Positions 12,052 through 13,327 are shown, counted from the first letter of the stretch. The stretch is 64,000 nt of DNA from Saccostrea cucullata (GCF_032062105.1 NW_026940645.1:1-64000); one strand, 5' to 3'. Program-made: numbers and translations. Notes: a model not told the origin generated them from the letters alone.

Positions 12052-12356
12052 CTAAAAAGAAAAGAAAAATAAATCAAAATTATTAACTTGTAAAGCAAGG
12101 AAATTGGTATAAATCTATTGGGTCACTGCAGAAAATATGTGACAATATAATTATGATACTTATATCTATGAATAGAAAATGAATCTATGAAAACTATCTA
12201 ATTAATATTTTGAATATAGATACGTGTACCTAGGTGTATGCCTATAAAGACTATCTCTGAGAATATCATGTAGTGATCAGTCTGTTCACTCAATTTTATT
12301 TCTTCAGAGCATATTTTCTGAAATTCTTTTAAAGTGGTATAATAATGTAACGTGAT

Positions 12357-12402
12357 GCGGTCACCCATCCAAGGGTTAAACAGGCTCGCCGTTGCTTAAC
12401 TT
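12357..12402 (-). promoter_or_regulatory. 5S rRNA-derived internal Pol III control region (box A - IE - box C), copy 1
   Basis: Minus strand aagttaagcaacggcgagcctgtttaacccttggatgggtgaccgc versus invertebrate 5S AAGTTAAGCAACGTCGAGCCCGGTTAGTACTTGGATGGGTGACCGC (recalled). Confidence 0.8.
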
Positions 12403-12773
12403 GCCTGAAATAGAGGGAGACTCTACCGCATCACCAGAAAAGCTAGCTCATTGGCGATGCAGTATAAGTTCCCTATATACTCTCCGCTCAGGGAAACTTC
12501 GACCCGAAGCTTAGCATGAGTTCTCTCTGAGTATCTGAGCCTCTCAGCTACGGCAACCAATGCCGTTCCTGGACACGACGTCCGTACCTGGACACAAAGT
12601 CCTAATCTTAGAGCTTTCTGAAACAGATCGGAACCTGACTTCAGATACGGCAACCCCTGCCGTCCACAGACACGAAGTCTGTATATGGACATTAACTACT
12701 AGCTCCAAGACTTCCTGAAGCAGGACACCAGACACCCAGAGTCACTACGCTGCCACAAATTTTGTAACGTGAA

Positions 12774-12819
12774 GCGGTCACCCACCCAAGGGTTAAACAG
12801 GCTCGCCGTTGCTTAACTT
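12774..12819 (-). promoter_or_regulatory. 5S rRNA-derived internal control region, copy 2
   Basis: Same as 12357-12402 with one substitution in box C (GGGTGGG for GGATGGG). Confidence 0.75.
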
Positions 12820-12882
12820 GCCTTAAATAGAGGGAGACTCTACCGCATCACCAGAAAAGCTAGCTCACTGGCGAGGCAGTAT

Positions 12883-13110
12883 ACGGAGAGATTAAGAATG
12901 GAAACGGAGAGATTAAGAATGGAAACGGAGAGATTAAGAATGGAAACGGAGAGATTAAGAATGGAAACGGAGAGATTAAGAATGGAAACGGAGAGATTAA
13001 GAATGGAAACGGAGAGATTAAGAATGGAAACGGAGAGATTAAGAATGGAAACGGAGAGATTAAGAATGGAAACGGAGAGATTAAGAATGGAAACGGAGAG
13101 ATTAAGAATG
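12883..13110. repeat. Perfect 21-bp minisatellite, ~11 units (acggagagattaagaatggaa)
   Basis: Directly visible; produces the METERLR / LNLSVSI / FLISPFP repeat ORFs. Confidence 0.97.
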
Positions 13111-13327
13111 CCCAGGAGTTCAAAGGAAGTGTATTGAAGACATTTAGTGTACAACACACTGTTCAGAATGCAAAAAGTTCCCTATGTTCTGTCCGCTACA
13201 CTAAGTATCTACCTCTGTTTATCCCATGTATCTTATTCAACCTTATAAATATGAACAATATTTATTCACTAACATCACTGTCTTTTATTTACGGAAGCTT
13301 TTTGCTTCTAATTGAAAATATTTTTTA

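What the first reader, a model, noticed from the sequence alone, without database searches (positions are those of the whole stretch)
12346..13200. 5S rRNA-promoter-bearing miniature LTR retroelement (Cassandra/Ajax-like TRIM) in a bivalve-like genome
Seen: two ~96% identical direct repeats start TGTAAC, and the right one closes with ...TACA at 13200. Each holds a 46-nt minus-strand segment matching 5S rRNA from box A (AAGTTAAGC) to box C (GGATGGGTGACC) and no other part of 5S. Five bases inside the upstream LTR is TGTGGCAGCG, complementary to a tRNA-Leu 3' end. The interior is only ~270 bp and non-coding. Known: plant Cassandra TRIMs carry this 5S segment in their LTRs, and as I recall the 5S-type animal TRIMs (Ajax) were described from nemerteans. 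Inference: this is a Pol III-driven non-autonomous LTR family mobilised by a Gypsy partner, possibly undescribed in molluscs. Caveats: there is no clean polypurine tract, the flanks match only 3 of 4 (ataa/ctaa), and the LTR distal halves differ by indels.
Basis: partly seen in the sequence, partly recalled or inferred. Interest (0 to 1): 0.82.

Follow-up and report, generated by a model that had tools for sequence, protein, structure and literature searches.

The report
5S-promoter miniature LTR retrotransposon, damaged copy
This stretch is a worn-out copy of a small, non-coding jumping gene, present a few hundred times in this genome, whose end repeats carry only the promoter part of the host's own 5S ribosomal RNA gene; that design was known before only from plants (Cassandra) and two ribbon worms (Ajax).

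Summary
Window 12346-13200 (sense strand is minus) is one decayed member of a dispersed TRIM family.

Better-kept copies show the following:
- They are 579 bp long (a short subfamily is 481 bp).
- The LTRs are 146 bp, starting TGTAGCGG and ending CACGTTACA.
- Four nt after the 5' LTR sits a primer-binding site complementary to 11-20 nt of the genome's own tRNA-Leu(AAG/TAG) 3' end.
- A G-rich polypurine tract lies just before the 3' LTR.
- Target-site duplications are 4 bp.
- There is no coding capacity.

LTR positions 90-135 match host 5S rRNA positions 49-94 at 41/46 (box A, IE, box C). The rest of 5S is absent, and Rfam's 5S model does not call the LTR.

Counts with up to 3 mismatches are 369 LTR segments and 77 internal domains, which implies many solo LTRs. 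Intra-element LTR identity is 91.8-100%.

The window copy has a mutated PBS, lacks the PPT and the 3' LTR start, and carries a 291-bp insertion in its 5' LTR.

Pol III transcription and a Gypsy helper are inferred, not shown. The element is Ajax-like in design but makes 4-bp, not 5-bp, duplications. No mollusc 5S-TRIM was found in the searchable literature. The scan's earlier notes on this genome list tRNA-type TRIMs only.

The parts
12342..12345 (.). Target-site duplication, one side (ATAA on the + strand)
   Evidence: It matches 13201-13204 (CTAA) at 3 of 4 positions. Other copies have perfect 4-bp duplications.
12346..12483 (-). 3' LTR in the element's sense, LTR positions ~9-146. The first ~8 nt are lost in a 15-16-bp deletion.
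   Evidence: by comparison with 22 independent full copies.
12357..12402 (-). 5S rRNA promoter fragment (box A, IE, box C) of the 3' LTR
   Evidence: 41/46 identity to host 5S positions 49-94. Its first 44 nt (12359-12402) are an exact pattern hit.
12438..12441 (-). TTTT on the sense strand (LTR 51-54), the only T4 run in canonical copies. Candidate Pol III terminator.
   Evidence: Its function is inferred only.
12473..12479 (-). TATATAG motif (LTR 13-19), 77 nt upstream of box A
   Evidence: It is intact in 41 of 44 LTRs of 22 copies.
12484..12747 (-). Internal domain: two ~97-nt hairpin-rich repeat units. The polypurine tract at its 3' end is deleted in this copy.
12748..12758 (-). Primer-binding site, TTGTGGCAGCG here and TGGTGGCAGCG in 18 of 22 other copies. 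[quoted passage not shown]
12759..12762 (-). Spacer AAAT between the 5' LTR and the PBS
12763..12883 (-). 5' LTR, positions ~26-146
   Evidence: 95.9% identity to 12346-12466.
12774..12819 (-). 5S promoter fragment of the 5' LTR, with one extra change in box C
   Evidence: Read. Homologous to 12357-12402.
12884..13174 (.). Insertion that splits the 5' LTR: 21-bp unit x 10.9 (12883-13110, 100% identical copies) plus 64 bp
   Evidence: The 64-bp part is almost unique in the genome. Absent from all other copies examined.
13175..13200 (-). 5' LTR, positions 1-26. TGTAGCGG start; the TATA motif is mutated here.
   Evidence: repeat family D6.
13201..13204 (.). Target-site duplication, other side (CTAA)

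Best explanation
[quoted passage not shown] Its 146-bp LTRs carry, in sense orientation near their 3' end, only the internal control region (box A, IE, box C) of the host-type 5S rRNA gene. That makes it a TRIMp3 element of the Ajax design.

Shown: the family inserts by integrase (TG..CA ends, 4-bp duplications), has a tRNA-Leu primer-binding site and a polypurine tract, encodes nothing, and includes young copies.

Inferred mechanism:
1. TFIIIA/TFIIIC bind the 5S fragment.
2. By 5S gene geometry, Pol III starts about LTR position 42. That is about 29 nt downstream of a conserved TATATAG.
3. The transcript runs through U5, the PBS, the strongly folded internal domain and the PPT.
4. It stops at the only T4 run (LTR 51-54) of the 3' LTR, leaving a short terminal redundancy of about 10-13 nt.
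5. The RNA is packaged, reverse-transcribed from tRNA-Leu and integrated by proteins of a Gypsy-type element. That element shares the ..ACGTTACA LTR end, the A/T spacer and the tRNA-Leu PBS.
For: Family and structure:
- 621 first-look candidates. Most of the 40 full-length matches scored are LTR-internal-LTR.
- Ends are TGTAGCGG..CACGTTACA.
- Perfect 4-bp duplications occur in 15 of 22 independent copies, and two more fit 5 bp.

PBS:
- TGGTGGCAGCG sits 4 nt after the LTR in 18 of 22 copies.
- A 481-bp subfamily copy (L079) has 20 nt of complementarity.
- The genome's tRNA-Leu(AAG) and (TAG) genes end ..ATCCCACCGCTGCCA.

PPT: GGGGG(G/A)AAG abuts the 3' LTR in 17 of 22 copies.

5S fragment:
- 41/46 identity to host 5S positions 49-94. 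By element: box A 14/15, IE 5/6, box C 16/18. The flanking 5S parts are at random level.
- No RF00001 hit at E<=10 in the window copy or in a canonical copy.

Signals consistent with Pol III:
- The only sense-strand T4 run is at LTR 51-54.
- No poly(A) signal variant is present in the LTR.

Internal domain RNA: -126 kcal/mol, z = -5.4 against shuffles.

Age: LTR pairs are 91.8-100% identical.

Helper:
- 527 sites hold the 18-nt tRNA-Leu PBS.
- Many follow LTR ends ..ACGTTACA plus AAATT-type spacers.
- These precede ORFs with Retrotrans_gag, CCHC and aspartic protease domains.
- One composite, flanked by ATAA/ATAA, joins TRIM parts and parts of one such family (L064-like) exactly at LTR/PBS borders.

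Comparison with Ajax: it has the same design, namely a promoter-only 5S piece and a tRNA-Leu PBS (PMC10886601).
Against:
- The T4-free stretch of 429 nt is not unusual. 23% of dinucleotide shuffles also lack TTTT.
- A start at LTR ~42 would meet the T4 run after ~10 nt in the 5' LTR, so the model needs read-through there. A start after the T-run would leave no terminal redundancy.
- The conserved TATATAG could equally serve Pol II.
- Post-insertion diversity is no lower in the 5S fragment (0.020-0.024) than in the rest of the LTR (0.016-0.027). The copies therefore give no signal of constraint, and none is expected from neutrally decaying copies.
- No helper shares LTR or internal sequence beyond the termini and PBS.
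- The Gypsy assignment rests on gag and protease domains only.
- The composite is a single locus.
Confidence: 0.8

Rival explanations
1. Same TRIM, but transcribed by Pol II from the TATATAG in the LTR like ordinary TRIMs. On this view the 5S fragment is a passenger, a relic of a 5S or SINE3 insertion, or acts only as a TFIIIC/TFIIIA-binding or chromatin element.
For: - TATATAG at LTR 13-19 is intact in 41 of 44 LTRs.
- A start ~30 nt downstream of it coincides with the start predicted from 5S geometry, so the two models cannot be separated by position.
- Copies show no lower diversity in the 5S piece.
- Cassandra-like TRIMs with TATA boxes and no 5S piece exist in plants (PMC10853983).
Against: - No AATAAA-type signal anywhere in the sense LTR.
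- Exactly the three Pol III control elements are kept while all other 5S parts are gone.
- The same promoter-only layout is found in Ajax, with a TATAT motif 78-79 nt and a T-run 36-39 nt upstream of box A. Here the distances are 77 and 39 nt. This comparison was done by eye on the published sequences.
Confidence: 0.25
2. The family is a true phylogenetic relative of nemertean Ajax, by shared lophotrochozoan ancestry or horizontal transfer, rather than an independent capture of a 5S promoter.
For: - Same layout.
- tRNA-Leu PBS in both.
- G-run polypurine tract in both.
- Box A starts 57 nt (here) against 59-61 nt (Ajax) from the LTR end.
- This element and Ajax-1_LiLo both read AACC where the host 5S gene of this genome reads AGTA.
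All of these were read by eye from the supplement.
Against: - Over the first 44 nt of the 5S piece, the element differs from its own host's 5S at 5 positions and from Ajax-1_LiLo at 8.
- The 35 nt upstream of box A are ~31% identical to Ajax-1_LiLo, which is random level.
- Target duplications are 4 bp against 5 bp, and the internal domain is 189-287 bp against 108-113 bp.
- Kojima found Ajax in only two closely related nemerteans.
Confidence: 0.15
3. Not a mobile element: a local tandem duplication or satellite dimer, a 5S pseudogene, or a SINE3.
For: The window alone shows only two repeats 417 bp apart and a partial 5S match.
Against: - Hundreds of dispersed copies share the same ends, 4-bp duplications, PBS and PPT.
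- The 5S match does not extend.
- There is no A-rich or LINE-type tail.
Confidence: 0.01

Closest known systems
Ajax (Ajax-1_NGe, Ajax-1_LiLo), 5S-promoter TRIMs of two nemerteans (Kojima 2024, PMC10886601)
   Same: - TRIM whose LTR holds only box A, IE and box C of 5S, in sense orientation near the LTR 3' end.
- PBS assigned to tRNA-Leu.
- G-rich PPT.
- Non-coding and a few hundred bp long.
- TATAT motif and a T-run at nearly the same distances upstream of box A (by eye).
   Different: - 4-bp, not 5-bp, target duplications.
- 481-579 bp against 421-434 bp.
- Internal domain 189-287 bp against 108-113 bp.
- PBS complementarity 11-20 nt against the 6 nt highlighted for Ajax.
- Different host genome.
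- No evident similarity outside the 5S piece.
- The 5S piece is closer to its own host's 5S.
Cassandra (plant TRIMs; Kalendar 2008, Maiwald 2024)
   Same: TRIM with a 5S-derived Pol III promoter in both LTRs. Many solo LTRs.
   Different: [quoted passage not shown] Here only 46 nt are kept, and Rfam's 5S model finds nothing.
- Plant hosts.
- Three-LTR arrays made of TRIM units alone were not seen in the 29 other family copies fetched.
Molluscan Helenus (tRNA-derived TRIMp3 of pteriomorph bivalves, Kojima 2024)
   Same: TRIMp3 design, 4-bp duplications, and PBS regions shared with Gypsy families. First-reader notes list tRNA-type TRIMs in this same genome.
   Different: - The small-RNA module here is 5S, not tRNA. 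ARAGORN finds no tRNA in the element.
- Bivalve Helenus families use Lys, His, Ile, Pro, Glu or Ser primers, not Leu.
SINE3 (5S-derived SINEs)
   Same: The 5S internal promoter is kept and the rest of 5S has diverged.
   Different: SINE3 has no LTRs, PBS or PPT and is mobilised by LINEs. This family has all the LTR hallmarks.
biv-TRIM (Satovic et al. 2019, PMC6934838)
   Same: A TRIM reported from bivalve genomes.
   Different: biv-TRIM has no canonical PBS, no 5S piece, and a conserved inner motif TGATCCCAAAGGAC. That motif is absent here.

Membership tests
TRIM (non-autonomous LTR retrotransposon) | Two terminal direct repeats of about 100-250 bp with TG..CA ends | tested here: met
   146-bp LTRs, TGTAGCGG..CACGTTACA, in 27 full copies.
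TRIM (non-autonomous LTR retrotransposon) | PBS complementary to a tRNA 3' end just after the 5' LTR | tested here: met
   11 nt (20 nt in L079) complementary to the genome's own tRNA-Leu(AAG/TAG)+CCA, 4 nt after the LTR. The window copy has one substitution in it.
TRIM (non-autonomous LTR retrotransposon) | Polypurine tract just before the 3' LTR | tested here: met
   GAGCGGGGGGAAG abuts the 3' LTR in 17 of 22 copies. It is deleted in the window copy.
TRIM (non-autonomous LTR retrotransposon) | Target-site duplication of fixed length at dispersed sites | tested here: met
   Perfect 4-bp duplication in 15 of 22 independent insertions; the rest match 3 of 4 or fit 5 bp.
TRIM (non-autonomous LTR retrotransposon) | Under 1 kb with no coding capacity | tested here: met
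   481-582 bp. The longest stop-free stretch is 62-65 aa in any frame.
Ajax / 5S-type TRIMp3 (Kojima 2024) | LTR holds a partial 5S-derived sequence limited to box A, IE and box C | tested here: met
   41/46 identity to host 5S positions 49-94. 5S 1-48 and 95-105 are at random level. No RF00001 hit at E<=10.
Ajax / 5S-type TRIMp3 (Kojima 2024) | 5-bp target-site duplication | tested here: not met
   4 bp here. Table S2 of the paper gives 5 bp for both Ajax families.
Ajax / 5S-type TRIMp3 (Kojima 2024) | Sequence homology to Ajax-1 LTR or internal parts outside the 5S piece (same lineage) | tested here: inconclusive
   Compared by eye only with the sequences shown, and no clear similarity was seen.
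Ajax / 5S-type TRIMp3 (Kojima 2024) | Transcription by RNA polymerase III from the LTR | not testable with these tools
This is also unproven for Ajax itself.
Cassandra | Conserved 5S RNA sequence in the LTR that folds like 5S RNA, with its own Pol III terminator | tested here: not met
   Only 46 nt of 5S are kept. The covariance model is silent.
SINE3 / 5S pseudogene | 5S-derived head at the 5' end, a LINE-type or A-rich tail, and no LTRs | tested here: not met
   The 5S piece lies inside a repeated LTR. PBS, PPT and 4-bp duplications are present.
Helenus | tRNA-derived sequence in the LTR | tested here: not met
   ARAGORN finds no tRNA in 12346-13200. The LTR module is 5S-derived.
biv-TRIM | Conserved inner segment TGATCCCAAAGGAC and no canonical PBS | tested here: not met
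   The motif is absent from the element as read, and a canonical PBS is present.

The most novel reading that the evidence does not exclude
This is an independently arisen third lineage of 5S-promoter TRIMs, the first outside plants and nemerteans. It was active recently and runs a complete retrovirus-like cycle on a Pol III transcript. On this reading a TATA-assisted 5S internal promoter sets the RNA start, and a single T-run about 10 nt further on sets the RNA end, so a ~10-13-nt R region is defined by Pol III signals. The near-identical spacing of TATA, T-run and box A in Ajax would then be convergent design. The heterologous composite at C1218 would mark co-packaging with its Gypsy helper.
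Probability: 0.35. Interest if true: 0.65.

Novelty: new member of a known kind. Interest (0 to 1): 0.5.

Why it matters
5S-promoter TRIMs are documented from plants (Cassandra) and from two nemerteans only (Ajax). A 2024 review table of rDNA-derived modules in transposons lists no other animal case.

This family offers a second, better-marked animal case:
- a long, unambiguous tRNA-Leu PBS;
- clean 4-bp duplications;
- young copies;
- candidate Gypsy helpers in the same genome.

That gives a tractable system for asking how a Pol III transcript can serve as an LTR-retrotransposon genome. It also matters for practical annotation: about 370 LTR segments here look like 5S promoter fragments and could be mistaken for 5S pseudogenes or 5S loci.

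Tried and rejected
- More genome letters. Full-length candidate helpers (RT/IN order, 3' LTR, their duplications) and other 5S-LTR variants (for example C49, C4922) could not be read.
- Rfam at E<=10 on the window copy and a canonical copy gave no 5S hit and only chance snoRNA/leader hits.
- T4 depletion as evidence for Pol III is not significant (P about 0.23).
- Covariation in the internal domain. The copies are too alike: only 2 of 89 pairs have double changes, though several pairs vary GC<->GU.
- BLAST of the TRIM against 30 tRNA-Leu-PBS loci found nothing beyond the LTR end and PBS.
- Allelic empty site for the window insertion: no second contig with these flanks.
- An exact 26-nt scan of metagenome contigs gave no hits.
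- Host identity. The ESM Atlas look-up of a Gypsy gag gave no useful taxa, and window ORFs are transposase remnants. 'Bivalve' is therefore unverified.
- The Ajax sequences from the paper's supplement were compared by eye only. Typing them into a tool was left out.

Full report
WHAT IS IN THE WINDOW

Direct repeats start at 12346 and 12763, both with TGTAAC. They match for 121-126 nt at 94-96%. After 12883 the right repeat is interrupted by a perfect 21-bp x 10.9 minisatellite (12883-13110) plus 64 bp. It resumes at 13175 and ends ..GCTACA at 13200. The flanks are ATAA and CTAA. What it called indels are one 291-bp insertion and one short deletion.

THE FAMILY

A search of the window's own genome (1.17 Gb) with 12346-12762 gave 621 first-look candidates. 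Of the 40 that were scored, almost all consist of the query followed directly by its first 143 nt, which is the LTR-internal-LTR layout.

I extracted 27 full copies. Five are haplotig duplicates with identical flanks, leaving 22 independent insertions.
- On the window's minus strand, which is the sense strand, they begin TGTAGCGG and end CACGTTACA.
- They are 563-582 bp long, mostly 577-580.
- 15 of 22 have perfect 4-bp target duplications of unrelated sequence (AAAT, CTAT, TATA, TCTC, CATG and others). Two more fit 5 bp, and most of the rest match 3 of 4.
- LTR pairs within elements are 91.8-100% identical, mean 96.9%. Insertions therefore range from old to very recent.
- The longest stop-free stretch is 62-65 aa in the six copies checked.

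A shorter subfamily copy (L079, 481 bp, duplication GTTT) has one instead of two of the ~97-nt internal repeat units.

Pattern counts with up to 3 mismatches are 369 for the 44-nt LTR segment and 77 for a 44-nt internal segment. The reversed-pattern controls gave 0. That ratio is nearer 5:1 than 2:1, so solo LTRs are common. Two caveats apply: the internal domain is more diverged, and haplotigs inflate both counts.

PRIMER SITE AND POLYPURINE TRACT

Four nt (AAAT) after the 5' LTR, 18 of 22 copies read TGGTGGCAGCG. L079 reads TGGTGGCAGCGGTGGGATTC.

The genome's own tRNA-Leu(AAG) and tRNA-Leu(TAG) genes, found by pattern and confirmed with ARAGORN, end ..TTCGAATCCCACCGCTGCCA. With CCA added, the PBS is complementary to the last 11 nt of the tRNA, or the last 20 nt in L079.

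Immediately before the 3' LTR, 17 of 22 copies have GAGCGGGGG(G/A)AAG. The missing polypurine tract is thus a defect of the window copy. A 15-16-bp deletion between two AGCGG repeats removed the tract and the first ~8 nt of the 3' LTR.

The window copy is damaged in other ways too:
- Its PBS reads TTG instead of TGG.
- The TATA motif of its 5' LTR is mutated.
- Its 5' LTR carries the 291-bp insertion.
- Its target duplication matches only 3 of 4.

It is a dead copy.

THE 5S PIECE

RF00001 finds arrays of true 5S genes in the genome. Against one of them (L031:769-887), LTR positions 90-135 match 5S positions 49-94 at 41/46 without gaps. The local score is 67, against 14.8 +/- 2.2 (maximum 25) for shuffles.

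I placed the control elements by the Xenopus 5S numbering, which I take from my own knowledge. On that basis:
- box A is 14/15;
- IE is 5/6;
- box C is 16/18;
- the stretch between IE and box C is 4/7;
- 5S 1-48 in register is 12/48;
- 5S 95-105 is 4/11.

Rfam at E<=10 does not call 5S in the window copy or in a canonical copy. So the LTR keeps the internal control region and nothing that would make a 5S RNA.

A genome-wide pattern of box A, then 20-26 nt, then box C gave 232 hits. In the first 100 listed, 9 are true 5S genes. All the rest carry the TRIM lineage's signature or near variants of it, such as CCTGTTTAACCC. I therefore saw no separate SINE3-like source, though the contexts could not be read.

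SIGNALS FOR TRANSCRIPTION (INFERENCE)

If the 5S piece works as in a 5S gene, transcription would start near LTR position 42.
- A TATATAG at LTR 13-19, about 29 nt upstream of that point, is intact in 41 of 44 LTRs.
- The only T4 run on the sense strand of canonical copies is at LTR 51-54.
- No poly(A) signal variant occurs in the LTR.

This suggests U3 of about 1-41, R of about 42-54 and U5 of about 55-146. A Pol III RNA would run from the 5' LTR to the T-run of the 3' LTR.

There are weak points:
- The 429-nt T4-free stretch is not unusual (23% of shuffles).
- The 5' copy of the T-run would have to be read through.
- The TATA motif fits Pol II equally well.
- Diversity among copies is no lower in the 5S piece.

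The internal domain folds far better than shuffles (-126 kcal/mol, z = -5.4). It forms a long closing stem and repeated short hairpins. Several of the variable pairs in the copies switch between GC and GU, but the copies are too similar for a covariation test. A role in packaging or dimerisation is a guess. No RNA data could be obtained.

THE HELPER (INFERENCE)

The 18-nt tRNA-Leu PBS occurs at 527 sites with up to 1 mismatch. In the 30 sites fetched:
- most follow an LTR end ..(A/C)CGTTACA and a short A/T spacer (AAATT, AAAATT, AT), as in the TRIM;
- nine of ten downstream ORFs tested carry Retrotrans_gag or SCAN, CCHC and, where the ORF reaches far enough, aspartic protease domains. This is the Ty3/Gypsy type of gag-protease.

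Nothing beyond the termini and PBS is shared with the TRIM.

One locus gives a sharper lead. At G000:C1218:8181-10477, between perfect ATAA duplications, the order is:
1. TRIM LTR;
2. PBS plus a leader 91% identical to locus L064;
3. about 140 bp ending in a purine-rich tract;
4. an LTR of the L064 family, itself split by an ~810-bp insert;
5. AAAT, the PBS and a normal TRIM internal domain;
6. TRIM LTR.

Both swaps sit exactly at LTR/PBS borders. That is what strand transfer between co-packaged RNAs sharing a PBS would give. It is a single locus and could have other histories.

The four-base duplications agree with what Kojima reports for animal, Gypsy-linked Helenus.

COMPARISON WITH WHAT IS KNOWN

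Kojima (2024, PMC10886601) named TRIMs with Pol III promoters TRIMp3. The groups are Cassandra (plants, 5S), Helenus (tRNA; includes 51 families in pteriomorph bivalves) and Ajax.

Ajax has these properties:
- a 5S promoter fragment only;
- a tRNA-Leu PBS;
- 5-bp duplications;
- a length of 421-434 bp;
- a known range of only two closely related nemerteans.

The present family has the Ajax design. It differs in duplication length, size, strength of the PBS match and host.

I read the Ajax sequences shown by eye; no tool alignment was run.
- Box A starts 59-61 nt from the Ajax LTR end, against 57 here.
- A TATAT motif lies 78-79 nt upstream of box A in Ajax, against 77 here.
- A T-run lies 36-39 nt upstream of box A in Ajax, against 39 here.
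- Over the first 44 nt, the 5S piece here is closer to its own host's 5S (5 differences) than to Ajax-1_LiLo (8 differences).
- The sequence upstream of box A is unrelated.

I therefore favour independent capture over common descent, without a formal test.

Other comparisons:
- biv-TRIM (PMC6934838) lacks a PBS and a 5S piece and is different.
- A 2024 review table lists only Ajax and Cassandra as 5S-promoter LTR elements.
- Full-text searches found no mollusc 5S-TRIM.
- Repbase and Dfam could not be consulted.
- That the host is a bivalve was not verified here.
- Earlier scan notes on this genome mention tRNA-type TRIMs but no 5S type.

VERDICT

Polymerase use and helper identity remain inferred. 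This is a new member of a known kind and of moderate interest.

I built no family consensus and single out no copy for revival. The copies are only described and dated.

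Noticed in passing
G000:C1218:8181-10477 (loci L083 and L027): A composite flanked by ATAA/ATAA. The order is: TRIM LTR; PBS plus L064-like leader and a mini internal part; L064-family Gypsy LTR; PBS plus TRIM internal domain; TRIM LTR. 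Both swaps sit exactly at LTR/PBS borders, so it looks like a reverse-transcription recombinant.
   Followed up: partly
window 12883-13110: A perfect 21-bp minisatellite (ACGGAGAGATTAAGAATGGAA x 10.9, 100% identical) plus 64 bp is inserted in one LTR. The 64-bp part has only one weak partial match elsewhere in the genome (C246).
   Followed up: partly
LTR sense positions 56-69 (window 12423-12436 and 12840-12853, minus strand): Just after the T4 run, the LTR reads TGGTGATGCGGTAG. This resembles the tRNA-Leu PBS (11 of 15 with one gap) and is not significant on its own. One copy (L020) has a deletion joining this point to the real PBS.
   Followed up: no
window 5814-5905 (-) and 47959-48050 (-): ARAGORN calls two 92-nt 'tRNAs' (Tyr-ata, Phe-aaa). 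They are two copies of a tRNA-derived SINE that share a downstream core (..TGGCACGAAAGAGATCCCTC..).
   Followed up: partly
window 10941-11813 (-) and 16513-17304 (+): ORFs with weak DDE_Tnp_4 (PIF/Harbinger-type) and DUF4371 (hAT-like) matches. The TRIM lies in a transposon-rich stretch.
   Followed up: no
window 13329-13476 and 13519-13749: Degenerate 21-bp tandem repeats, and a 49-nt inverted repeat pair 133 nt apart (MITE-like), just downstream of the element.
   Followed up: no
genome-wide: 527 sites hold the 18-nt tRNA-Leu PBS. This points to a large radiation of Gypsy-type families with LTR ends ..ACGTTACA, several of them with intact gag ORFs.
   Followed up: partly
loci L002/L004, L008/L021, L016/L017/L030, L019/L025: The same insertion with the same flanks appears on different contigs. 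The assembly holds uncollapsed haplotigs or recent duplications, which inflates copy counts.
   Followed up: no
G000 contigs C467, C8535, C21111 versus C407, C5039, C5565: There are two classes of 5S arrays. One has a ~1.6-kb period and scores 118.8 bits. The other has a ~1.74-kb period and scores 110.8 bits.
   Followed up: no
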